Notes: a model not told the origin generated them from the sequence alone. A stretch of DNA of 64,000 nucleotides from Parasitella parasitica NRRL 2501 (GCA_025201805.1 MU619265.1:179394-243393), one strand, 5' to 3'. Shown: positions 5,114-46,100, counted from the stretch's first letter. Numbers and translations are program-made.

Positions 5114-6247
<1,134 letters not shown>

Positions 6248-7947
6248 GCATATAATGTTAGTGTATGTCACTTAATTTCAGGAGATAAATGTATACATAT
6301 AAATCGCTTTTACTCTAAATTTCAATTTCTTTTTAATTCAGGATCTTACTCCTAAAAGAAGACAATCACCACGGTATACCATGTTTTCTTTTCTTATTGT
6401 TTTTTTCTGAAGCGCATTATCTACCGCTGCAAACAGAAGAAAATCTCTGTCCCTAATTTACCAGCCCAGACCTGTAATAAAACAGCGAAAAATAAGCGAA
6501 AAATAAGCGTTGGTCTGTATTGTTTGCAAACTCTCACTAAAAACATCGATGTTGGGTATTTTTACTCAAATGGACCCGAGTAACCATTGATTCTGTGTTA
6601 AGAAAATTGAATTTTCTCTACTGGGATGAAAACAGTAAATGGGAGGCAGGGTGCATACAATTCATCTCCTCTCAATTAGTTAATACATTGCCTTCATATC
6701 TGCATAAGCGCTATTGATGTATTCTAGGCTACAGCACCTTAATCTAAACAGTTATTTTGGTAAAAAAAAAAAAAAAAGAAAAAAAAGGCGGGAGGGGAAG
6801 GATGGAAGGTACATTGTCCAATATAGAGATCATACTGTCATCAAAAGATAGTTTTCTCTGGTTCGAAACCTCTCGCAGTTTATATCTAGTGCTGGTTATA
6901 TTCATGTTAATACATGAATGGCACAAAATTTACCAAGAACGTCAAAACCACACATTTTTCTTAAAATGCTCACCCACACAAATAGAATAAACTCTGTTGC
7001 ACCTTGATTAAAAAAAATGCAAACCAATTCGAGTCAATCTTGAGGCACGAATAGCGTAGCATGGTATTTTTTCGTTGTTGATCTTAAAAGAAATTAAAAA
7101 AAGCATCGCAACGAGGACATGCACAATTCAAGACCTTACATATGCTTACATTTTATAGTTTTGGCTATATTTACCACGAATAACTGATAAGTGATCTGGT
7201 GCAATGAATTCTTGGTTTGTTTTCATCGCCTGAAACAGTCTGATAAGAGGCTAACTGTTCAGTTTAGTGAATGTTATCACTTTTAATGATGCTAAGCTGG
7301 ACAAAGCTGTAAAAAAGGGGCCACTCACAGCTAATACACTCGGCATTTGAAAACGGCAACCCATTTAGAAACGAATAGTACTTTTTGGATCGCCATGGGT
7401 TGCCTCAAGACATTCGCGCTAATAATGTCTAGATTCAAACTGTGTAAAAAGAACGCGGATCATTTAGAATGTCTCATAATAATCTAATGAATCCTCTTGG
7501 CTAGCACTATTAATATGACGCAGCCTTTGCCAGTGATAAATAGTGGCAACAACTGTGTGGCGAATCGGAGCAGCAACGTACAAGTGAATCTTGGGAATGA
7601 AACGGCCTAAAATTAGATTTGCAATAATCTTCTTTGATTATTATAAATAATAGGACATAAGATTTGTTTGAACAACAAACAATGTGATTTCTGTCAACAT
7701 GTCAATTGTACTACCTACGTTTGAAATGGCCTACCGCATACACATAGCATCAATTTGATAGTACATCTGTTGCAAATCTTCCATCTTCCAAGGCTCACTC
7801 AGTTTACTCCGAATCAAGATATTTTAGTCAGAGGGGCCAGGTCCCACCATTTTTGATTATTATATAGTGGATGTCAAAACTATAATTAAACTTTCTTTTT
7901 TTCTGCTTCTTTCTCTTTCTTTCTTTAGATCTTAACAATTGAAGGAA

Positions 7948-28427: not shown

Positions 28428-31400
28428 TTGCAATTTCGAATTTGTCTTCTACGCTCAATTGTACACTGCAGAAAGAAAAATAGAGACTATGATGAGCTGT
28501 ATATCTATTTATTGAAAAGTATTAGAATACTTAAAGGTGTAGTGCAAGAGGCAGAAGCAAAAATCAAGGGTCCAGGAAAAATCACAACGATGTTAAGCAC
28601 CGTGTATACACAGAATAAAAAGGCTGAAAGTCTAAAAAAGGATTATGAGTACTGGAAAGAATCTGTAGAGAAGAACTTCCAGTCTCTTTTGGATTTACCA
28701 GAAAAGGATGATGGTAGCAATGATGATAAAGACAGTGAAGATAGCGAAGATGAAGACAGTGATAAAGCGACTCAAGATGACACTGAGCAATTTCGCGCAT
28801 GCTCAACTTCTTTAAGTCAAGTGCTCAGGGACGACTTGCCAGACGACATCAGGTTGTTATTCATCAATACAATCGGTGCTACCATGGAGCAAGTATCTAA
28901 TTGTACCTCTGACTTCAGCAAGCAGGTTCTCAAAGTCGCTCTGTTGTTTGCTGAGTATACATTTGAATCTAATGACAGCAACATTGAACTTGTCTACGAT
29001 GGTGGAAACAACATTGCGTCAATACTGCCAGAAGGGTATTTAGAGGAATACATCACTGTACCAAAGCCATTAGATTCCAGCTCTCTCCAGAATGACGAGT
29101 TCAATGCTCACTATCAATCGCTGTTTCTAGAACCCCACTTGGAACAAATGCACTCAACATACTATGGTCAAATGGGTATTGAAGAGTCTACCCTTGAAAA
29201 GTCGCCTTCGCACAAGGCAATTGTAAACGTTTTGGGCCGTGACGAAGCCAACCCACATCAAAATTTGTCCTCGCACATTATGAAGATGGCTCGCCAACAG
29301 TATTACACGAATCTTCGTATTATGTGGTCCGAAAATACTATTGTCAACAAGCTACTTAGAAAGCTCTTGAACTTCTTGCTGTTGATCCATTTATCTCCCG
29401 ATCAAGACCATGCTATCAAGGCGAAGAAAACTGAAAGAGAATCGGCCAAGCTCCGAAAAAACCATAAAGGCAAATAGAGAGTAACAAATTGCAGTATCCC
29501 AATGGCAGAAATTTCAGTGTTAAAGAAGACAAGAAATGGAAGACGAAAGCTGTTTTCTGATGAAAAGAAGCCAAAAGCCAAGTATGAAGAAAAGGAAAGC
29601 ATGAGGCAGCAGACATGTGCCAGACGAGAATCGATAAATATGAGCAAGTACTTTATAGAGAGGTAGGGGTCGTCTAGTTTTCAAAGGAAGACATAGTGTC
29701 GTAACTCGGAATGTATGTAGCAAGCGGAAAGGGTCAGAAATCCAAGACAGCAGCAGCAGCAGCAGCAAAAACAAGGAAAGCGTCAAGAAAGCGTTACTGA
29801 TGATAGAGAGGACTACGAGAAAGGGAACAATACCAATGTATCTAGAAAAAGAATCAGTCAGTTAGGCGACATTCCAAGATCAACATTGTTTGCCACGCAA
29901 GATATCACAGACGCGTACCTCCAAGATCAGGATGAACACATCACCACACAAGAATCTGTAACAATCATCAAAATTTCTAGCTTCATTCGGCCATACATAC
30001 CATCAAGCGAGACTTATCATCTCCTTCCATGCCAACTCAAGTTCATCTTGATGGCAAACCAAGTACTGCGCTCTATTGGCTATGAAGGCCAAGTTGCTAA
30101 ATTTCTTCCAATAGTCAGACCCACTACTTTGCATGCACTTCTTATTGACACAACGACCCTGTATGCACTTTTCTGCTCGAGCAAACTTTCAAAACGGATG
30201 TATCTTCGAGACTTTCAAGGCAATTACGTAAAGCATAAAGACACCAACGCAAAAAAAGATGCCGTCTTTAGCAATTTCTTTAACATTGAGAAACTAAAAA
30301 GCGTGACATCAAGCTATGGGATGGAGTTCATAAATAGAATACACATCTTACCAGGATCGAAGACTGTTAGATTGTATGGCAGCATTGGACATTTCAAGTC
30401 TAGTCGCAGGAACCCAGAAACAAAAAAAGCAAGCTGAGCCATCATACAGATGACGACTAGTTACGAGCTATGAAGGCTCAAAAGAAGGAGCTCGATAAGT
30501 CACTCAGGGATCGCACAAACGAATTCTATCAGTTTCTTCAAGACAACGACAGTGTTCGTGGCCTCAAGAAAGCTTGGAAAACCAACTTTGAAGAACAAAA
30601 ACAATGTTATGAGAAAGTCGAAGATGCCCAAGAAAGGGACAAAACTTCTGATCTTACGAAGACTTGGAAGGCTAAAGTTGAAGAAAACGACGAGCGCTAT
30701 CGGAATGTGGAATCAGTAAAGTTAAGGATTAATGGTGGCTATTCGAGATACAAAAGAGAGGCTTCAGTCCCTGCGGCGAGAGATTTATGAATATGGAAAA
30801 CCTTTAGTGAATGATTTGAAAACTCTAATACCATTTAAGCCCTTCACTGTGGGTAGCAATAGATGCTGTAGAAAGGTAGAGGAATGCAAGCTGGACGAAG
30901 ACATGGATCGGACAACAGCCGTGTTCAGTGGCACGGATAATGGCATTATAAAGACTACCGAGATAGTGTTTTTTGAAGTCGATCGTTTCGCACCACACTT
31001 GAAGCTGTACAATAGGTTTCAGATCTTGGGTATGTAACTCAATGCCTTTGAACACATATGTATATAGTTAAAGAAACTGATTCTATATATGTTTGCCTAC
31101 TATAGAGGATACCAAAGATGCAGACAATGCTGATGGTTCAAATACAGATGAAGCTGATATTTTTGAACACTTGACTCTACCTCGCGCTCTCACTTTGGGC
31201 TCCAAGCAAATCAACCAGATACCGGCTTGGCTATATTTATAAATTCGTTTATTCGGAAAAAAAAGACCACAGAAGACAGGTACAGAGTTTTGGAGATGGA
31301 AAAGGATCTTGGAAAAAAATAGTCTTTATCAATGCTCAACATCTGATGGTTTGGAGCAAGCCTATTCGCATCACACTAATGCGCGCGCATCGTTGCGCTC

Positions 31401-31980
31401 ATTCTATTACAACCAATCCATGATAAAAAGAAGAAGACGGCTGGAACTCTCTTACAGAAAAGGCTCTGACAGACTAGCAGCTTACGAGAGAAAGAGTTGT
31501 TGCAAGAAGCCGATTATGTTTGTCGGTGATCGTGGACACGGATTCGGCTCTCGCATCAAGGGACACAGACAATTTGGTGGGTTCTGAAAACAGCAGCGAC
31601 ATAGCCGCTATACACCAACTCTGATAACAAATGCACATAATACGTCGCAAACATGTGTTTTCTGCTTCTACAAGCTCTCTCATCCTGTGGCTGCTCTCAA
31701 TGGCAAAATACAGCGAACAGCCGGTTCATTTCTTTTCTTAAATCCCGAATGCCCCAATGCTTTCAAAACAATGTGCTGCGACCAAGTCCCAGCACTTGCA
31801 ATTGGTCTTGCTGATTTTGGTTGCCTTTTGTTTGGAGTAACTTTCCCCTGCTTCGACCCAAACCCCACCACATGCCAAGCGCACACAATTCAGCAATTTG
31901 GCCCTATCTTTTTTGTACAGAAAACAGATACTGGGCTCGCCTTTCGATGGAGGCAATACTCTTTGAAGGTTAGTAAATAA
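28428..31980 (+). pseudogene. Degenerate Fanzor (eukaryotic TnpB-like RuvC nuclease), copy 1
   Basis: Fragmented ORFs homologous to 39125-42830: SLSQVLRDDLP, LLLIHLSP, FIRPYIPS, FILMANQVLRSIGY, RuvC-I FSGTDNG, MFVGDRGHGFGSRIKGH..FGG, LITNAHNTSQTCVFC, NPECP..DQVPALAIGLA. Multiple stops/frameshifts and a catalytic E to A change. Introns at 29663-29720 and 31030-31105. A degraded N-terminal exon may lie at ~27860-28070. Confidence 0.88.
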
Positions 31981-38048: not shown

Positions 38049-38899
38049 TTTATCTTTCTTTCTATTATAAATATTCCCCATTTTCTCTCTACTTGATTGA
38101 TATGCAGACGACACTAAGCCCTCGCATTTTAATCCTATCTAATTATTAAAATACTTGTAGGCTCATTCTCATCACAGAGCGTTTTGGATAATTTGGAATG
38201 ATGTGGGATATGGTTGACCATATAATCAAGTTTGGTAATTTCGGTTGATTCACTTATAACGGTGGTTCGTGATGAGATATGAAGTAGGCGTTCAGAAGAT
38301 CAAGAACTTTTTTTATAACACATTTCATTCAAATTTCAGATGTTGAACTAAAAAGGTATGTGCTATATCAAAGTTATCTCATAGACCTTTTATGCAACGT
38401 CCCACTCGTAGTATTGGTATCTGAGGTAAATCATTGATAATCCTGATTTACATTCATAGTAAAACCCTTTGTTAGTGGATCTATAGTAATTCTTTGACGG
38501 ATTTGTTTTATTTGACTTTAGACATAACGCTATAGTGTCTTGAGTGGGTCATGTAATAATTTTTACTAACAAGAGTGGTATACAAGTCATTTCAAATCTC
38601 AGGTACAATACCGATCGATTAGAATAATGTACCACTCTTTGCAATGAAAAAAAAAGCTTACCAAACCTAAAAGATATAACTAATTCTGACCTCACAGAAT
38701 TTTATATATAACTTTATCCCTTGGTAAATCTTTTTTATGCGGAAGAATCCCCTTCAAATTATGCTCAGAGTCAAAACAAACAACACCTACATCTCAGACC
38801 ACAAACAACTACATAATGCAGGCAATATGTTTATTTGAAAGTAAGGACTGTGATTCGGTGGAGTAATGCTTTCAAATGACAAGAAATTCACAGCGCAGG

Positions 38900-39130
38900 A
38901 AACCATAATACTGATAGAGTAAATGAACTATGAGACCAAGCGAAAGCCACAATATTAAGACCGTTAATAAAAAATAGCGCAAAGAGTAATTGCATACATA
39001 CCAACAAAAGAGATGGTTATGTTGTAAAAAAATTATATAGAAGAAAAAGAGAATGAGTTTCTGATAGTAATAAGCTTTATAGAGTTTCTGAATTTACCGA
39101 ATATAGCCCTCATCGAGGGCAGGCCTATAT
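38900..39130 (-). ncRNA. Candidate omegaRNA region of Fanzor copy 2 (boundaries uncertain)
   Basis: Perfect hairpin GCCCTC-GAT-GAGGGC (39120-39106) 4 nt after the annotated stop; homologous to the copy 1 hairpin. Confidence 0.4.
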
Positions 39131-42100
39131 TTTTTTCTTGTTAAGAAAGACATCAGCAAGTTTGTTGAAATTGTCAGTTCTTGAAAAACTGGTTTTTGCG
39201 TCGAAGGATGGGAATGTCACGCCGAAGACGAGTTGGGCCACACCTGCCAAACCGATCACAAGAGCACTGAGAGTGTCTCTGTTGTGAGTGATGTGGGCAG
39301 ACTTGACAGAGATACAGTCTTTATTGACACAAATGAATGCACCTTTGACTGTCTTGACTTGGGTTTGGTCGTTGTCTCGTACGACACGTAACGGGTGAGA
39401 GAGCTTACGAAAGCAGTATGGGCAAGTCTGGGATGTATTATGCTCGTTTGTGTAAAGTACCGAAGAATACAGGCTATTCTTTTTGGGCTTCCAGTGACCA
39501 CCATAACGCAAAAAGCCTTTCGTTCGTGAACCAATACCAAGCCCGCGATCACCTACAAACATAACAAGGCGCTTAAGCCTTTTGTCTTCTTCGACGATGC
39601 AATGATTTCGTTCAGCGGAGCATAATTTATCAATGAATTTTCTTTTCCGCAACTCGTATTGTCTCTTCTTTTTTGCAAGGTGAGCAGAGTTGTAGAAGCT
39701 TCGGACCTCCTCAGCACGACTAAACTGTTTGTTCTCCCAGACAAGTAATTCATCAATCGTGTTGACGTCGGATAGGCTCACACTGCTCAAGTCGGCTTCA
39801 ACATCAAACATTCGACTACTGCTTTTAAATTTCAATTTCCTTGTATGGGCCTCTAGGGCACGAGCTCCACTCCCATAGCTGATATCTGTGCCATGAACTC
39901 CGAATGACTTTGGCATTTTGAGGAAGGCAGGTACTTGATTTGCATGTAAGCTTATTGATCCTGAAGATAGAGTTAGACAAAAAAAAATAGGCGCATCTAC
40001 TTGAAAATTACCTGTAGCAGGAGATGCTTGTTGCCTATGCAAATTCAAGTGATACAGAAACCTATCCATAGTAAATACCACTGTTTCTGTCATCGTTACG
40101 AGGCCATTATCTGTGCCTGAAAATCGAAGATTTCCTGAATTGAGGAGGTCATCATCAAGCTTGAAGGATGTAACATTGCCGAGACACTTGAAATTTGTCT
40201 GGCTGATAATATGCTCTTCTTGATCTTGATCTTTTGTAGCAGAGTCAAAACATTCTTGATACATTCGTTGTCTAAAATTTGCTAGCCTCTCTTTACAACC
40301 TAACAATCTTTGATTGATTTCATCCCTTGTGTTTTTCAAATGTTGAATTTGCGTATACAAAGATGTCTGATTTTTNNNNNNNNNNNNNNNNNNNNNNNNN
40401 NNNNNNNNNNNNNNNNNNNNNNNNNNNNNNNNNNNNNNNNNNNNNNNNNNNNNNNNNNNNNNNNNNNNNNNNNNNNNNNNNNNNNNNNNNNNNNNNNNNN
40501 NNNNNNNNNNNNNNNNNNNNNNNNNNNNNNNNNNNNNNNNNNNNNNNNNNNNNNNNNNNNNNNNNNNNNNNNNNNNNNNNNNNNNNNNNNNNNNNNNNNN
40601 NNNNNNNNNNNNNNNNNNNNNNNNNNNNNNNNNNNNNNNNNNNNNNNNNNNNNNNNNNNNNNNNNNNNNNNNNNNNNNNNNNNNNNNNNNNNNNNNNNNN
40701 NNNNNNNNNNNNNNNNNNNNNNNNNNNNNNNNNNNNNNNNNNNNNNNNNNNNNNNNNNNNNNNNNNNNNNNNNNNNNNNNNNNNNNNNNNNNNNNNNNNN
40801 NNNNNNNNNNNNNNNNNNNNNNNNNNNNNNNNNNNNNNNNNNNNNGGAGAGTCAAGCTTCAGAGCCAATAGAGAAGTTGGTTTTACAATAGGCACAATTT
40901 TCCTGACCCATTTAGAGTATCCGGTACTTTTAAGGAGATTATTGGCCATCAGAAAAAAAGGAAGTTGACGAGCGACAACAAAAGATTTGCTTCTCTGAGG
41001 TATGAAAGGCGATACAAAATTGATGATAATTAAGCAAACTCTGACTTCGTTATTATCGATATCGGGTAAAGAAGCTTTCAATCTGTCTTCACATTCAGTT
41101 TCAAGTGTTTTTTCGAGGATGATTCGTCGCATTGTTGTTTTTAGAGTATTAATACGACGGCTTGGTAGGTCGGTGGTTGTTTGATTCCCTGAATCTTCCT
41201 CATTTCGCAGTTCTTGTGCAGCAGTCGGGTTGGCGTCAGCTTGTAGTTCTAATTCCGTCTCCTGGTCATCTTTGATTGCAGTTGCTGAATGAATTTCACG
41301 AGCTTGTTTCTAAATTATGTCATCAGTTATAAATGCATATATCTACTATGTATATATATCTTCATTGATAAATTTACCTCCGTGTACAAAACATGTTCAT
41401 ACGTATTAATTCTTTCGCCGCATCGAGTCGCTTTTTTAAACCATTTTATCTGCATTGGGGCGATCATTCATTGCTTTTATCTGATTAGATTCTTCCTGGC
41501 TTCGTTCTTTCTTAAACAATCGCTTTCTTGCATGGTAAGACAATCCAATAAGTAATATATCGTCAACGGGAATAGAGCTTGCGTATTGTTTGACATTACG
41601 AGCATTTTGACGGTCCCTTTGACGATCTAAATAATCTCGTTTTTTAGCCTCACGCAAGGGAGCTAAATGAACACGAAGGAGAGCAAGCAGCAAATGATTA
41701 AGCAGGGAATAGAACGCCTTGTTGTTGGACCACATGTTTAGGAAATAAGTTTTGTATTTCGCCAAAGCCATCTTCATGATAAAGGGATCTGCTTCGATAT
41801 CTGATTTATTTGTGATAGGAAGTGCCGATATTATAGTTTTTTCGATTCGACGGTTGTCCTTTGTACCTTCTCTAATACCAAGTTTACCAAAATATTCAGA
41901 ATGAATACGATCCAAGTGGCTGTTATTAAAAAGTTTATCAAATTCTTGAGTGAAGATTTCATTCGATAGACAATCGCCTGGTAACGGTGGCGGCATTTGT
42001 CCAAACCGCGGATCGAAATGATATCCTGCTGGTAAAACATAGGCAGGATCTGGGCCAGTTTTGGGTTCAAGAGCTACACGATCATTTTCATGCAAGACAA

Positions 42101-42830
42101 AGGATGACGTTTCAAATAGCAAGACGATTTTCAATATCTGTAAGCTGTATCTAATAATGTAGTCTGTAGCATGTGTCGTAGCTTGCGATATTCTATTAAA
42201 AAATTCTTGTCTAATATCTTGTGGTAAATCTTCACGGACAATAGATTCTAAGCTGCAACTGATTGTTCTGACAAATTCTTTATCATCAACATCTTCGAAA
42301 GTAGAAACACTACCAGTTGATTGCTGTTCTGGAGTAAGAGAAGCAGTCGAAGTTTCATTTCCTTTGATTTTTTCTTTGATTTCTTCAGTAAGAGTAACAA
42401 AGTTTTTGTTTATGAAATCTTTCCACAGTTGGATGCCCTTTTTGCCCTTACGAGAAAGTCTGTTTATGTATTTTTCAATTTCCGTTGTTTGTATTGCTTG
42501 ACCATCTATAGTGTTCCGTTTTTCAGCCTCTGTCACTGTTCCTTTCGGTAAAGCCTTCATCGATATAAGCATATCCTTCAAAGGTGATACATCATCTTGA
42601 CCTGATTTGCAGTATGCGTGGATTTGAAACGAGATTCTTCTTCTAAACTCATTTGCATCACGTGAGCCATTCCCTCGACTGCGTTTGGCTGCCGCTTGAC
42701 TAGATTCTGCTACCACTTCTGTTTCCTCAATGGCTCTTTTTTTGCCCATTGATTTCCAGCGTGGAGGAGTGTTTATTTGTGTTACGCCAGGAATATAAGT
42801 TAATCGTTGTTTCTTTTTAGTTCTAGCCAT
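39125..42830 (-). CDS. Fanzor1-type RNA-guided RuvC endonuclease, copy 2 (near-intact; one +1 frameshift near 41445; interrupted by an assembly gap)
   Basis: RuvC-I LRFSGTDNGLVTM; VMFVGDRGLGIGSRTKGFLRYGG; relocated catalytic Glu TNEHNTSQT; zinc finger CPYC...CVNKDC; RuvC-III HNRDTLSALVIG. Introns at 41310-41377 (phase 0) and 39961-40011 (phase 1). About 1,190 aa if the gap size is right. Confidence 0.9.
40376..40845. other. Assembly gap (470 N) inside Fanzor copy 2
   Basis: Run of N. Confidence 1.
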
Positions 42831-43169
42831 TTTTCATCTGCAAAGGTTATAAAAAAATGAAAAGAGAAAGAAAAATGGATTGCAGAATCTTCATTTTTAT
42901 AATGAGAACAAAAGGGTCTGATGCATATGTTTCCTGATTTATCTCTGTGTGAGATAAACAATATCGTTCTTCAATTAGAGGAACAATACGTATTTATCAG
43001 TTAATTCCTCGGTGAGGTTTTTATGTCGTAGTATTTTTTGTTTATATGGAGACCTTGGTCCCGATTTTATTTGAGTGAAATTTAATGCATAATAGCAAAA
43101 CGCAACCTTTTTTTTTATTTTTTTTTAAAGATCAAGTGTATACATGCGGATTATTTTGTTTTTCTTCAA

Positions 43170-46100
43170 TTATTTGCTTGCAGCCTTTGCATCAGATACA
43201 ACCTCTGAGGGTATACCCGCTTCAAGTAGCACTGATTCCGGAAAAGCTTGACCAAATTCAGCACAACTTGTTTGCAAGATCTGATAAATAATATCTATAT
43301 ATAACAGTCAGTGATTTCTTTTGGACAACACACAATTAATTTAAAAACTTACAAACAGGGAATGATGGAGTAGATGGATAAAAACGCTTTGCCATATCCT
43401 TCAACTTTGATTGCAGTTTTTCTTTTGTAGTACTAGATAACCTAATGATGTTTTCCCAAGCAGCGCGCTGAAAGTTCCAATTATATTCATCCAATATGTG
43501 CATTAAGCTTAATCCTTCTTCGTATAATGATTGGGTATAAGCGCATTCCAGCAAGTCGTACTCAGGAACAAGTCTAGAGTTCAAATCCTGCAGGATCTTT
43601 TTGCTGGGATTCTTTTGTTCAATCAGTGATTCGCACATTGTATATTGCACCTGCGCAACCTTGTATTTGCGTTCGATGGATTCACACTTTTCTTTACAGA
43701 ATCCTTCAGCTCGTGGCAGGTATTCGCATGCTTTCTTCAGGGCGTTTACTCTGTGAGATAGGCCGACTTGATCAGCCTCTGTCGCCAGCCGATAGACAGC
43801 GTCGGCAGATTTGGCAAACTCGTTACGATATGCATAATAGTGCTCGAGCAGTATTAATCTTTGACGAAGATCAGGTTTTTGTGTTTCGATATATGTGAAG
43901 AGTGTGGGTATTTCCAAACTTGTCAAAAGATGATGATGATCGTGTTTATCAAGCCATGCGTAAATAGCGTAGTGATAGGTGCTTTCGTTTGTCATTTTTA
44001 GTGCGTTTGTTATTACGTCTTTAGCGTATTTCTCCTCGTTTATCTCTATAGCTTGTTGGATTACTTCAAGAACATTACTGCAAACTTGTGAAAACTCCAA
44101 ATCCCCACGAGAATAGCTTGCAAACGCAAGTTCAATGGCTGCATTATGATCCCCTAAATCAGAAAACTGTTGTGTAAGGGCAGTGATTCGCTTATCATTG
44201 CAAATATTAATAACATTCTTGAAATGCTGTAAAGCTAAACGCAATGCTTGTTTTTTTTCGCTTTCATTGGTATTGCTGTACGCAGCATATAAATTTTCAA
44301 CACCCTAGACGTAAGATAAATAAGGGCGTGTCTTTTTTTTATACCAAAAACTGTTGTCACCTTAAAGTAAACCACATTGTCTTTCCCTAAAAGGGTTACG
44401 CATTCGCTATCCAAGAAGTTACCGATAAAGTTGAAATTATTGGAGGCGTTAGATAATTTCGATATCTCTATGGCTGTGTATACGATGTTTTGGGCTAATA
44501 TACCACCTTGGTATGTTGTTACAAACTCACAGAATGTGCAGACAGTGAATTTGCTTCCAAGTCTACATAAGCTAATAAGTTACAAGAGAAAAATACATCG
44601 ATTATTTGATCTTACTTTGCTACAATTTGTTCCCACTTCAAATCATGTGCAAAAGATATTAGTGAGATAGATTCAATTGAAGCCAATACAAGATCCATAA
44701 CATCCTATAAATGATAATATGAGTAAAAAGACTCGTTTTTATACTTCGACTCAAAATTACCGTTGTTGGGATTTGGTTCCGCTGATATTCATGAGCTAGT
44801 GCTTTCAGACGTTCTTGAACTACTAAAAATTTACCTTTGGCAAACCTATCAAATATCGATTAACTCTAGCTATCGAGTGCTCTATCTTTTCACATACTTT
44901 TCTGACTTAATATCTAAGGTCCATATATCTTTGACGAGACGGGCAAAATAAAGTAGCAACCCCTCTTGTTGGACAACAGATTGGCGGATCAAGTCTATAG
45001 CACGTGATGTTTGTCTCTGTGAACAAGCCAGCACATGAGCGACATAGCAAGTTTCAATAGGTCCATAGCGTTGTTCGAACTTTTGTAAATTTACAGGCGA
45101 GACCGATTGCAATGCTTGTTCTAAATAATCAGCAATGTGTTGTTTGTAATAGCGGACAATTCCACGGGTTGTTAGTGTTGAAATTTGACGATGTGAGCTA
45201 GCAAACGGCTCGAACGTTGCCTTCAACGTAAAGTCTGTCTGTCCGCTTCCTTCCTCTACAATAGACCACACTTTGTCATCGAATTGTTTGTAATATACAT
45301 CTTCTACAAGGACTGGCTTTGTCTCTTCGACGGATGCGAAGTTTGTGCCGGTCAAAACTAGGTAGTGCTTTTCTGATTTAGAAAAAATGGATGCGAAAAT
45401 TCCTTGCTGGTAAAAGGATAAATTAGCATGCTGATCAGTCAAATCGTTGAATAGAATAGAGCCTGGCAAAGGTGGTGCTGATCGAGTGAATTTGAGTTTG
45501 ATATTTGGATATTCATATTGGAAATAGAGTCGATCTCCATTCTTTGCAACTGCCATTAGGCTAGGTTTTTTGGTATCTTGAACAAGACAAATAGATTCCA
45601 GATCTCGTCCCATATAGCGCTGCAACGGAACATAACGTACACCTCCAATTGAAGCAACATGGATGCTGGAATCCGATAACAACACGTACAATAAATCCTC
45701 TGCTTCGTCCAATGCTAAAGATTTTAAATCAGCAGCAGGAGGAGATTTGAAAAACATATTCAAATAACGTAAGACCGGGTTCATCGTAAGGCAAGAAAGG
45801 CTTCCATCTATTGGAGCACCATTATTGTCAAAAGTGAGGACAAGCTCATACAAATGTCCATCGTCGCCCTTCATGAAGACTCTCTTCGTTTCTTTTGTTG
45901 CTACAATATCAGACATGACAACGCCAGTTGAATTCACTCTGATACCAGTTGCTAGCTGTATTTTGTGTTGGCCTTGCGTGATGGTGTGCAAGTAAATGAA
46001 ATCTCGAGTACAAACAATCAGTTCCTCGCGAGTAGCAAATGCTACGATATCAACATGCTCAATCACTTGGTTTGTCTCGTATTTAAACACCTGTGAATCC

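What the first reader, a model, noticed from the sequence alone, without database searches (positions are those of the whole stretch)
39125..42830. Near-intact, very large, intron-containing Fanzor RNA-guided nuclease with no adjacent transposase
Seen: all three RuvC motifs (GTDNG; NEHNTS; NRD), a CxxC..CxxxxC zinc finger, two GT-AG introns, and a long basic N-terminus (MARTKKKQR, AAKRSR, NLS-like). The spliced length is about 1,190 aa. The only visible lesion is one extra base near 41445 (GATAAAATGG): removing it gives KWFKKATRCGERINTYEHVLYTE, which matches copy 1 CQTRIDKYEQVLYRE. Established: Fanzors are eukaryotic TnpB homologues, guided by an omegaRNA, with the catalytic Glu relocated next to the zinc finger. 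Inference: this is a recently active or still functional programmable nuclease that is larger than the characterised Fanzor1 proteins, and its N-terminal ~450 aa may hold uncharacterised domains.
Basis: partly seen in the sequence, partly recalled or inferred. Interest (0 to 1): 0.92.

Follow-up and report, generated by a model that had tools for sequence, protein, structure and literature searches.

The report
Large expressed Fanzor1 transposon copy
This is one copy of a young, multi-copy mobile element of the fungus Parasitella parasitica that encodes an unusually large (about 1,195 aa), transcribed and spliced Fanzor1 (eukaryotic TnpB-like, presumably RNA-guided) nuclease: a real but not unprecedented find, because Fanzor1 is already well known in this group of fungi.

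Summary
On the minus strand of 39125-42830 lies a three-exon gene with the Fanzor1 hallmarks:
- the RuvC Asp/Glu/Asp (GTDNG, NEHNTS, NRD);
- a CxxC...CxxxxC zinc ribbon;
- a basic N-terminus.

A family profile matches the solved Spizellomyces Fanzor1 (E 2.5e-6) and aligns our Glu and last Asp to its catalytic E541 and D606. A confident model of the C-terminal 416 aa (pLDDT 86) matches SpuFz best (Z 15.6), then PpFz and Cas12j/f.

Contigs of an RNA-like public run skip exactly the two predicted GT-AG introns (68 and 51 nt). All four runs laid lack the extra base at 41444, so the dominant and expressed form is in frame there.

The 470-N gap is not bridged. Two truncated copies elsewhere supply 221 and 253 nt of its two sides. 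Both are open in frame and collinear with a Rhizopus homologue.

The gene fills a 4.18 kb element (38908-43087) with sharp ends, no inverted repeats, no consistent target duplication and no transposase. There are 10 or more copies.

The genome is P. parasitica, where a different Fanzor1 (PpFz1) is already characterised. I file it as a new member of a known kind, about twice the usual size. The N-terminal region remains unexplained. Other first-stage notes of this scan also flag Fanzor relics in this genome.

The parts
38908..43087 (-). Whole mobile element (about 4.18 kb, counting the 470 N as written). Its ends are shared with 10 or more other loci of the genome.
   Evidence: Own-genome DNA searches and end alignments. 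All 11 copies with the gene-3' end start at the same base, ATACTGATAGAG on the + strand. All 7 copies with the gene-5' end stop at ...GAAATTTAATG. There are no terminal inverted repeats and no consistent target duplication.
38908..39124 (-). 217-nt non-coding 3' terminal region, from the stop codon to the element end. This is the expected place of the omegaRNA scaffold, with the guide read from the flank below 38908.
   Evidence: The position follows Fanzor1/TnpB loci (PMC10432273, PMC11423790). It is 96-97% identical among copies and present in more loci than the interior. The fold is not more stable than shuffles (z -0.73) and there is no Rfam match. The role is inferred, not shown.
39100..39131 (-). 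Hairpin over the stop codon. The core is GCCCTC-GAT-GAGGGC on the gene strand, at 39106-39120.
   Evidence: The second Fanzor lineage of the genome has a homologous hairpin, GCCTTT-CGAT-GGAGGC, inside the end of its coding region. One pair changes on both sides (C-G to U-A).
39125..39960 (-). Exon 3 with the stop codon. It encodes the RuvC-II/III part, the TNB zinc ribbon and the C-terminal tail.
   Evidence: Translation, the intron joint in X6, the profile match to SpuFz1 and the fold matches.
39275..39277 (-). Codon of the RuvC-III Asp (NRD).
   Evidence: It aligns to SpuFz1 D606 (residue named in PMC11423790). It is D in 30 of 32 family members that cover the column.
39314..39424 (-). Zinc ribbon, CPYC ... 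CVNKDC.
   Evidence: Weak Pfam PF07282 Cas12f1-like_TNB match (E 0.0016). Each of the four Cys is kept in 30-34 of the 33-35 members that cover its column.
39443..39445 (-). Codon of the relocated catalytic Glu (NEHNTS).
   Evidence: It aligns to SpuFz1 E541 and is E in 35 of 35 members. The canonical RuvC-II place reads FVGDRG, with no Glu.
39961..40011 (-). Intron 2: 51 nt, GT..AG, in frame and without a stop.
   Evidence: Skipped in an X6 contig and not in the DNA runs. When read through, this stretch is the low-confidence segment 129-139 of the model.
40012..40375 (-). Exon 2, the part after the gap: a long helix, then the first RuvC strands.
   Evidence: Translation and model. VIA aligns model 39-394 to SpuFz 357-633.
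40109..40111 (-). Codon of the RuvC-I Asp (GTDNG).
   Evidence: It lies at the end of the strand 83-89 in the model, within the range aligned to SpuFz 357-633, which holds D383. It is D in 17 of 23 members that cover the column. The residue-level equivalence is inferred.
40376..40845 (.). Assembly gap (470 N) inside exon 2.
   Evidence: Contigs of four runs extend into it from both sides. L040:5385-5605 (221 nt) and L039:5389-5641 (253 nt) supply the two sides, open in frame and collinear with P0032. The middle is not bridged.
40846..41309 (-). Exon 2, the part before the gap: an acidic linker, then a conserved region ending in the Fanzor1 WED-type motif P-I-V-K...L-D-S-P-S-L-Y.
   Evidence: Translation. 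It is collinear with P0032, P0016, P0004 and P0035. The motif was compared by eye with the SpuFz1, PpFz1 and GtFz1 sequences of Table S3.
41310..41377 (-). Intron 1: 68 nt, GT..AG.
   Evidence: Skipped in an X6 contig. Copy 1 of the window has GT right after the homologous ...YEQVLYRE, which suggests the same position.
41378..42830 (-). Exon 1: 484 codons once the extra base is set aside. It holds the basic N-terminus and a conserved helical region.
   Evidence: ORF 41436-42830. It is 100% identical to NCBI KAI8643850.1. It is homologous to the N-terminal parts of P0090, P0038, P0016 and P0113 and to 25 other own-genome matches.
41444..41447 (-). T4 run (A4 on the gene strand) that holds the one extra base breaking the frame in this assembly.
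   Evidence: One base is left out here in the single contig of each of X1, X2, X4 and X6. Homologue P0113 supports the reading without it.
42831..43087 (-). 5' untranslated and presumed promoter region, up to the gene-5' end of the element.
   Evidence: An X6 contig reaches 42948, which is 118 nt upstream of the ATG and inside the element. The region is shared with other copies at 89-95%.

Best explanation
The stretch is one copy of a young, transposase-less mobile element of Parasitella parasitica. Its only gene encodes a large Fanzor1-type nuclease of about 1,195 aa.

**Shown here**
- The element has sharp ends, and the assembly holds 10 or more copies.
- The gene is transcribed from inside the element, and its two introns are spliced out.
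- The C-terminal 350 aa fold like the RuvC/TNB module of solved Fanzor1 proteins.
- The relocated Glu, the last Asp and the zinc ribbon are in place and conserved across the family.
- The dominant and expressed form is in frame at the one place where this assembly is broken.

**Inferred from what is established for SpuFz1, GtFz1, PpFz1 and TnpB**
- Basic N-terminal patches take the protein into the nucleus.
- It binds an omegaRNA made from the 217-nt 3' end of the element. The RNA's last 15-20 nt, read from the flank beyond 38908, act as guide.
- It recognises a short motif (TAM) next to the target.
- It cuts DNA with the RuvC site at about D885, E1090 and D1146.
- Cutting element-free or excised sites would let the element be copied back by homologous repair. 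Transposition itself would need a partner enzyme supplied in trans, which was not identified.

**Where the extra length lies, against SpuFz1**
- about 360 aa upstream of the WED motif;
- about 127 aa (a Ser/Lys-rich linker plus a long helix) between WED and RuvC.
For: - **Homology.** Profile A1 against PDB hits SpuFz1 8gkh at E 2.5e-6, with E541 and D606 aligned.
- **Fold.** The AF2 model has pLDDT 85.9. Foldseek's top hits are SpuFz and PpFz. VIA gives Z 15.6, rmsd 4.1 over 261 residues to SpuFz 357-633, Z 13.4 to PpFz, then Cas12j, Cas12f and TnpB.
- **ESM Atlas.** The nearest clusters carry PF07282/PF26935 and come from eukaryotes and giant viruses.
- **Conservation.** Catalytic and zinc positions are conserved.
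- **Family size.** 531 relatives at E <= 1e-3. The ten relatives looked up by name include hits in Mortierella, Halteromyces, Mucor, Helicostylum, Rhizopus and Lunasporangiospora, up to 1,285 aa.
- **Expression.** Introns are spliced and the 5' UTR lies inside the element in the RNA-like run X6. The base at 41444 is absent in four runs.
- **Mobility.** Sharp shared ends in 10 or more copies.
- **Constraint (weak, small counts).** pN/pS is 0.28-0.52 between copies in the RuvC exon.
- **Collinearity.** All pieces, including both gap sides, are collinear with homologues.
Against: - No omegaRNA, TAM or cleavage was observed. The 3' region is not predicted to be unusually structured and has no Rfam match.
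- Pfam sees only a sub-threshold TNB match. Single-sequence PDB searches find nothing.
- The middle of the gap is unread.
- The window copy as assembled has a frameshift that contigs cannot assign to or exclude from this locus.
- The N-terminal 464 aa gave a useless model (pLDDT 42.6) and no match.
- The 5' flanks of seven copies show no single clear TAM: TA in 5 of 7.
Confidence: 0.8

Rival explanations
1. This particular copy is a dead pseudogene. The extra base at 41444 is real at this locus, and only sister copies are functional and expressed.
For: The assembly shows T4 where the dominant contigs show T3. The window differs from the dominant contigs at about 1% of positions, so it is a distinct copy. 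Many other copies are visibly deleted or truncated: L022, L030, L039, L040.
Against: A one-base error in a homopolymer inside a collapsed repeat is a typical assembly fault. There is no other indel or stop in the CDS. Contigs drop minority variants, so they cannot show the window's own allele either way.
Confidence: 0.4
2. The assembled gene is a chimera. The interior was pieced together from reads of several copies, or the two sides of the gap come from different copies or genes.
For: The interior has about six times the word depth of the unique flanks in X1 (668-772 against 112). At least four other full-size loci have 3-4 kb runs of N between the same ends. So the assembler could not separate the copies.
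Against: Both sides lie on the same strand and in the same order as in homologues P0032, P0113, P0016 and P0004. Other copies have the same two ends 4.0-4.35 kb apart. RNA and DNA contigs run into the gap from both sides with a single consensus. A mosaic of 97-99% identical copies would not change what the gene is.
Confidence: 0.1
3. The protein keeps the Fanzor fold but no longer acts as an RNA-guided nuclease, for example as a domesticated DNA- or RNA-binding factor. The large added regions would carry the real function.
For: It is twice the usual size. The added regions are conserved across Mucoromycota. No omegaRNA was demonstrated.
Against: The catalytic Glu (35 of 35), the last Asp (30 of 32) and the zinc ligands are conserved. 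It is multi-copy with sharp transposon ends and deletion derivatives, not a single-copy host gene.
Confidence: 0.08

Closest known systems
SpuFz1, the Fanzor1 of Spizellomyces punctatus (PDB 8GKH, 9CEU-9CEZ; PMC10432273, PMC11423790)
   Same: It is the best sequence-profile and fold match: E 2.5e-6, and Z 15.6 over model 39-394 against chain 357-633. It shares the relocated Glu next to the TS-CxxC motif, the RD motif, the zinc ribbon, a WED motif of the type P-L-R-R...I-D-T-x-x-L-Y, and a basic N-terminus. It sits in a multi-copy element without a transposase between its ends.
   Different: SpuFz1 is about 640 aa; ours is about 1,195 aa. Ours has about 360 extra residues upstream of the WED motif and about 127 between WED and RuvC-I. 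Identity is 13-15% in the aligned fold. Spu-1 elements have inverted repeats and ours has none. SpuFz1's omegaRNA and CATA TAM are known; ours are unknown.
PpFz1, the characterised Fanzor1 of the same species (PDB 9CF0/9CF1; PMC11423790)
   Same: Same host species. It is a Fanzor1 fold match at Z 13.4 and is also larger than typical Fz1.
   Different: It is a different protein. The N-terminus and sequence differ, and identity is about 14% in the RuvC part. Profile A1 does not reach it at E <= 10. The core of its 71-nt omegaRNA is not found in this assembly at up to 3 mismatches. Whether our protein has an FRI-like cyclophilin-binding insertion was not tested.
MCi-2 and MCi-5 Fanzor1 elements of Mucor circinelloides (Bao and Jurka 2013, PMC3627910)
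   Same: They are Mucorales Fanzor1 elements with several near-identical copies, no recognisable inverted repeats, no working transposase of their own, a well-defined 3' end and variable or fuzzy 5' ends. Here three copies carry 50-113 extra shared nt beyond the gene-5' end.
   Different: MCi-2 and MCi-5 are flanked by 11-12 bp or 6 bp target duplications; no consistent duplication is seen here.
Bacterial TnpB of IS200/IS605 (for example ISDra2) and Cas12f/Cas12j
   Same: Same RuvC plus zinc-ribbon core (Z 9.5-13.4). The element has no inverted repeats or target duplication and has a non-coding 3' end next to the nuclease gene.
   Different: This is a eukaryotic gene with spliced introns and a basic N-terminus. 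The Glu is relocated, there is no TnpA, and the protein is three times as long.

Membership tests
Fanzor1 | TnpB-type RuvC fold interrupted by a zinc-ribbon (TNB) domain | tested here: met
   The AF2 model has pLDDT 85.9. Foldseek's top hits are SpuFz and PpFz at E 1e-6. VIA gives Z 15.6, 13.4 and 10.4 to SpuFz, PpFz and GtFz. Profile against PDB gives E 2.5e-6 to SpuFz1.
Fanzor1 | Catalytic triad with the Glu relocated next to the TS-CxxC motif, and no Glu at the canonical RuvC-II place | tested here: met
   The Glu of NEHNTS aligns to SpuFz1 E541 and the Asp of NRD to D606. They are conserved in 35 of 35 and 30 of 32 members. The canonical place reads GDRG. The first Asp (GTDNG) is placed from the model and the aligned range, not residue by residue.
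Fanzor1 | Eukaryotic gene with spliceosomal introns | tested here: met
   Two GT-AG introns are removed in contigs of run X6 and kept in the DNA runs. The genome is Parasitella parasitica.
Fanzor1 | N-terminal nuclear localisation signal | tested here: inconclusive
   The first 50 residues hold 12 Lys/Arg, with patches KKKQR, GKKRA and AKRSR. No NLS predictor or localisation test was available.
Fanzor1 | Carried by a mobile element present in several copies | tested here: met
   There are 10 or more loci with identical element ends at 92-97% identity, plus internally deleted derivatives.
Fanzor1 | omegaRNA encoded at the 3' end of the gene or element, with the guide running into the flank | tested here: inconclusive
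   A 217-nt conserved non-coding 3' end and a hairpin over the stop codon exist, with one compensatory change against the sister lineage. There is no significant overall fold (z -0.73), no Rfam match and no small-RNA data.
Fanzor1 | WED-domain motifs (P-L-R-R...I-D-T-x-x-L-Y, then TDG) | tested here: inconclusive
   The first motif is present just before the gap (P-I-V-K...L-D-S-P-S-L-Y), compared by eye with Table S3 of PMC11423790. The place where the TDG-type motif is expected falls in the unread middle of the gap.
Fanzor1 | RNA-guided, TAM-dependent cleavage of double-stranded DNA | not testable with these tools
   This needs protein-RNA purification and a TAM library assay.
PpFz1 (same protein or orthologue) | Sequence identity with the published PpFz1 protein and omegaRNA | tested here: not met
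   The N-terminus and sequence differ. Identity is about 14% in the aligned fold. The omegaRNA core is absent from the assembly.
TnpB of IS200/IS605 | Prokaryotic insertion sequence with a TnpA partner and an intron-less gene | tested here: not met
   This is a fungal genome and the gene has spliced introns. There is no other gene inside the 4.18 kb element.

The most novel reading that the evidence does not exclude
The large Mucoromycota lineage (about 860-1,285 aa in Helicostylum, Mucor, Halteromyces, Mortierella and Parasitella) may be a distinct Fanzor1 clade. Its conserved extra regions are about 360 aa on the N-terminal/REC side and about 127 aa between WED and RuvC. These could add an activity that lets a transposase-less element with no inverted repeats spread on its own, for example RNA-guided homing or recruitment of host repair factors. 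That would explain how 10 or more near-identical copies arose without a visible transposase.
Probability: 0.12. Interest if true: 0.8.

Novelty: new member of a known kind. Interest (0 to 1): 0.45.

Why it matters
- **Biological role.** Fanzors are the only known RNA-guided DNA nucleases native to eukaryotes, and their role in the cell is still open. This family is young, multi-copy, transcribed and spliced, and has short 'ghost' derivatives. It lives in a fungus where another Fanzor1 has already been purified and solved. That gives a natural pair for asking what Fanzors do for their elements.
- **Size.** At about 1,195 aa it is roughly twice the usual Fz1 size. The extra regions are conserved across Mucoromycota, so it could show how the compact TnpB core is elaborated in eukaryotes, much as Cas12 grew from TnpB.
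- **Annotation.** The public gene model is a truncated 569-aa 'hypothetical protein' without the nuclease domain. The locus is therefore effectively unannotated.
- **Editing.** For genome editing, its size makes it less attractive than compact Fanzors.

Tried and rejected
**Searches that gave nothing useful**
- Single-sequence PDB searches with the C-terminal exon and the N-terminal ORF found nothing meaningful.
- Pfam on the three pieces and on nine long homologues gave only sub-threshold PF07282.
- The word-based protein search with the N-terminal ORF found only the gene's own NCBI model. With alignment A2 it added only P0090.
- The N-terminal 464 aa folded with a 6-sequence alignment gave pLDDT 42.6, so it was not used for a fold search. 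The ESM Atlas gave no usable hit for residues 185-464. The A2 profile against PDB matched only the C-terminal part.
- There are no Rfam families in 38300-43400, and the 3' region is not more stable than shuffles.

**Readings rejected**
- Terminal inverted repeats: none at 38908 or 43087.
- Target duplications: 'CATA' flanks the window copy only, not the other five full-size copies.
- Helitron ends (5'-TC ... CTRR-3'): they do not fit either strand (read).

**Steps that failed or were left out**
- Bridging the gap failed. Only C30 and C10 hold the two edge sequences, and they do not overlap. C125 shares just 61 nt and continues into unrelated sequence with a stop.
The short terminus-only matches (C251, C89, C95, C28) were therefore not examined.
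Pieces were used by reference. The 416-aa C-terminal piece was read through the in-frame intron 2.
- No complex prediction was run.
Full report
**1. What is there**

The minus strand of 39125-42830 carries one long gene.
- A 464-codon ORF starts at the ATG at 42830.
- It breaks at 41436-41445. A reading shifted by one base continues to a GT at 41377.
- The original frame resumes at 41309 and runs into the 470-N gap (40376-40845).
- A 416-codon open stretch then runs from 40375 to the TAG at 39125-39127.

- GTDNG, with the Asp codon at 40109-40111;
- NEHNTS, with the Glu codon at 39443-39445;
- NRD, with the Asp codon at 39275-39277;
- CPYC...CVNKDC at 39314-39424;
- basic N-terminal patches, with 12 Lys/Arg in the first 50 residues.

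**2. The gap (tested first, as asked)**

The gap could not be bridged, but both of its sides are now known from other sources.
- Contigs of four public runs continue past 40375 (256 nt in X1) and before 40846 (206 nt in X1). Each side shows a single consensus.
- The two 30-nt edge sequences occur once each elsewhere in the assembly.
- C30 (L039:5389-5641, 253 nt) continues the downstream exon part. It has no stop back to a poly(A) tract, where a LINE-like insertion cuts that copy.
- C10 (L040:5385-5605, 221 nt) continues the upstream exon part. It has no stop until an internal deletion joins it to the last 26 nt of the element.
- The two pieces sum to 474 nt against the 470 N written. They do not overlap, and no other copy bridges them.
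- Against the Rhizopus microsporus homologue P0032 the order is collinear: pre-gap piece to residues 1-135, gap-right to 133-204, gap-left to 244-282, post-gap to 298-395, exon 3 to 424-527.
- At most a short linker is therefore missing. By comparison with P0113 it should hold the position where Fanzor1 has its WED 'TDG' motif.
- For the frames to join, the true gap must be 1 mod 3. With 472 nt the protein has 1,195 residues.
- Continuity is inferred, not shown.

**3. Introns and the frameshift**

- Run X6 is labelled only as a guess at RNA. Its contigs skip exactly 41310-41377 (68 nt) and 39961-40011 (51 nt). Both read CT..AC on the + strand, which is GT..AG on the gene strand.
- The DNA runs X1, X2 and X4 keep these stretches, and X6 has no contig that retains them. 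X6 therefore behaves as cDNA, and both introns are confirmed.
- X6 contigs cover the CDS from 42948, which is 118 nt upstream of the ATG and still inside the element, down to 39683. A further contig covers 39125-39353.
- In all four runs the single contig over 41444 lacks one base of the T4 run.
- Without that base the frames connect. Exon 1 has 1,452 nt, so intron 1 is in phase 0.
- The 22 residues that follow match Helicostylum P0113 residues 215-236 at 55% identity, directly after the N-terminal match. They also resemble copy 1 of the window.
- This is the only indel in the CDS between the window and the dominant contigs.
- Contigs drop minority variants. Whether this locus truly has T4 therefore remains open.

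**4. What it is**

Pfam gives only a sub-threshold Cas12f1-like TNB match (E 0.0016), and single-sequence PDB searches give nothing.
- An exhaustive HMMER search with the C-terminal 416 aa finds 531 relatives at E <= 1e-3. Most are fragments.
- The long ones are unnamed proteins of Mucoromycota: Mortierella 1,285 aa, Halteromyces 975, Mucor hiemalis 937, Helicostylum 861, Lunasporangiospora 802 and P. parasitica CEP18690.1 757.
- A 36-sequence profile (A1) hits the solved Spizellomyces Fanzor1 (8gkh) at E 2.5e-6, and Cas12f next.
- In that alignment the Glu of NEHNTS falls on chain residue 935, which is native E541. The Asp of NRD falls on chain 1000, which is D606. The Cell 2024 paper names both as catalytic residues (PMC11423790).
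- Folded with A1, the piece gives pLDDT 85.9 and pTM 0.80. The only weak segments are the read-through intron (129-139) and one loop.
- Foldseek ranks SpuFz and PpFz first, at E 1e-6.
- VIA gives Z 15.6 (rmsd 4.1, 261 residues, model 39-394 against chain 357-633) for SpuFz and 13.4 for PpFz. It gives 12.4-13.4 for Cas12j, about 11-12 for the best Cas12f entries, 10.4 for GtFz and 9.5 for TnpB.
- The strand ending in the Asp of GTDNG (model 83-89) lies inside the range that holds SpuFz D383.
- Across A1 the Glu is kept in 35 of 35 members, the last Asp in 30 of 32, the first Asp in 17 of 23, and each Cys in 30-34 of 33-35. The canonical RuvC-II place reads GDRG.
- ESM Atlas neighbours carry PF07282 and PF26935, and come from eukaryotes and giant viruses.

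**5. Host and annotation**

- The N-terminal ORF is 100% identical to NCBI KAI8643850.1, 'hypothetical protein BD408DRAFT_442320 [Parasitella parasitica]'.
- That 569-aa model jumps over the frameshift with an invented intron and ends at the gap. It therefore lacks the nuclease domain.
- P. parasitica is the source of PpFz1, which has been purified and solved. It has a TAM of ATN, a 71-nt omegaRNA and an FRI insertion that binds cyclophilin (PMC11423790).
- Our protein is a different one. The N-terminus differs, the aligned fold is about 14% identical, and profile A1 does not reach PpFz1. The PpFz1 omegaRNA core is not found in this assembly.

**6. The element**

- Own-genome searches place sharp boundaries at 38908 and 43087.
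- All 11 copies that have the gene-3' end begin at the same base. All 7 that have the gene-5' end stop at the same base. They are 92-97% identical.
- There are no terminal inverted repeats, no consistent target duplication, and no room for a second gene.
- Four other loci (C21, C109, C179, C47) have the same two ends 4.0-4.35 kb apart, with 3.0-4.1 kb of N between them. I read these as unresolved repeat copies, but I cannot exclude that some N are withheld letters.
- In X1 the interior has a word depth of 668-772 against about 112 for the unique flanks. The terminal 150 nt are higher still. This fits several collapsed copies but is not a count.
- The window differs from the dominant contigs at about 1% of positions.
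- Derivatives exist:
  - a 333-bp copy on C2, made of 263 nt of the 3' end plus 71 nt near the 5' end;
  - C46, with several internal deletions;
  - C10 and C30, both truncated.
- The 3' end is present in more loci than the interior, like the 'ghost' omegaRNA loci described for Spizellomyces (PMC10432273).
- Transposase-less Fanzor1 elements without inverted repeats and with variable 5' ends were described in Mucor in 2013 (PMC3627910). 'No adjacent transposase' is therefore ordinary.
- Between copies, pN/pS is 0.28-0.52 in the RuvC exon and 0.7-0.8 in the N-terminal exon. These rest on small counts and are weak evidence of constraint.

**7. Where the extra length sits**

I used short motifs shared with the three published Fz1 sequences and counted residues, which is inference.

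| Landmark | Ours | SpuFz1 |
|---|---|---|
| Asp of the WED motif (P-x-x-x...h-D-S/T-x-x-L-Y) | about 637 | 278 |
| RuvC-I Asp | about 885 | 383 |
| Relocated Glu | about 1,090 | 541 |
| Last Asp | about 1,146 | 606 |

- About 360 extra residues therefore lie upstream of the WED motif. They comprise a basic, probably disordered 190 aa, a conserved helical region and an acidic linker.
- About 127 extra residues lie between WED and RuvC-I: a Ser/Lys-rich linker and a long helix, model residues 3-48.
- The N-terminal region is conserved in Mucoromycota homologues and in 25 other own-genome matches at 27-33% identity for the distant ones.
- It gave no usable model and no match. Whether it is an enlarged REC/WED or something new is open.

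**8. Putative guide RNA**

- The 217 nt between the stop codon and the element end are where a Fanzor1 omegaRNA would lie.
- A hairpin sits over the stop codon (core 39106-39120).
- The sister lineage of the genome has the homologous hairpin inside the end of its coding region, with one pair changed on both sides.
- The region as a whole is not more stable than shuffles (z -0.73), and Rfam has nothing.
- On the gene strand, the flank 5' of the element ends in TA in 5 of 7 copies. That is too few and too mixed to call a TAM.

**9. Verdict**

- It is a new member of a known kind. It is notable for its size and for the direct evidence of splicing and expression, but it is not a surprise in Mucorales.
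- RNA guidance, the TAM, cleavage and the role of the added regions remain to be tested.

**Method notes**
- The exons were never joined. All searches and folds used pieces by reference.

Noticed in passing
window 28428-31980; also G000 C55, C40, C25, C52, C233, C50, C38, C8 (loci L008-L020, L026-L029): A second Fanzor1 lineage has the C-terminal tail ...FLYRKQILGSPFDGGNTL. It turns up at more of the paralogue loci examined than the one studied, and is 40-49% identical to it in the RuvC part. Several of its loci also hold 3.3-4.0 kb runs of N. The window's own copy has stops.
   Followed up: partly
L039 (G000:C30:114000-123999), about 5640-6900: A truncated copy of the element is cut, at a place inside the window's gap, by a LINE-like insertion. 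The insertion shows the end of a reverse-transcriptase ORF with a Cys-rich motif, followed by a poly(A) tract.
   Followed up: no
L043 (G000:C125:60052-60106): 61 nt that code for the Ser/Lys-rich linker (PSSSKGKAPEKPLASTSK) recur on C125. There they are preceded by unrelated, partly open sequence and a stop, and are boxed in by N runs. The linker may have been captured from, or donated to, another gene. Unexplained.
   Followed up: partly
L030 (G000:C2:241027-241358): A 333-bp internally deleted derivative: 263 nt of the gene-3' end joined to 71 nt near the gene-5' end. It is a candidate 'ghost' locus that keeps only the putative guide-RNA end.
   Followed up: partly
L022 7149-7260, L032 4863-4973, L033 537-586: Three copies share a further 50-113 nt (TATCCGTAT...) beyond the gene-5' end, while their other flanks differ. 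Either the 5' end is variable, as in Mucor MCi-2, or they inserted repeatedly into one repeat.
   Followed up: partly
G000 C251:7962-8012, C89:133811-133848, C95:93856-93895, C28:264382-264418: Four loci match only the last 37-52 nt of the gene-5' terminus at 92-95%. They may be ends of related elements, including a possible autonomous partner.
   Followed up: no
window 41533-41647: One X6 contig joins 41533 to 41647, skipping 113 nt. The ends are GT..AG on the + strand, which is antisense to the gene, and the shorter side is 29 letters. It could be a deletion variant of another copy or antisense splicing. Unexplained.
   Followed up: no
window 39125-42830 (NCBI KAI8643850.1): The public gene model is a 569-aa 'hypothetical protein'. 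It bridges the frameshift with an artificial intron and stops at the gap, so the nuclease domain is unannotated.
   Followed up: yes
whole assembly G000: The core of the published PpFz1 omegaRNA (35 nt, up to 3 mismatches) is not found in this P. parasitica assembly. It may lie in an N run or be absent from this strain.
   Followed up: partly
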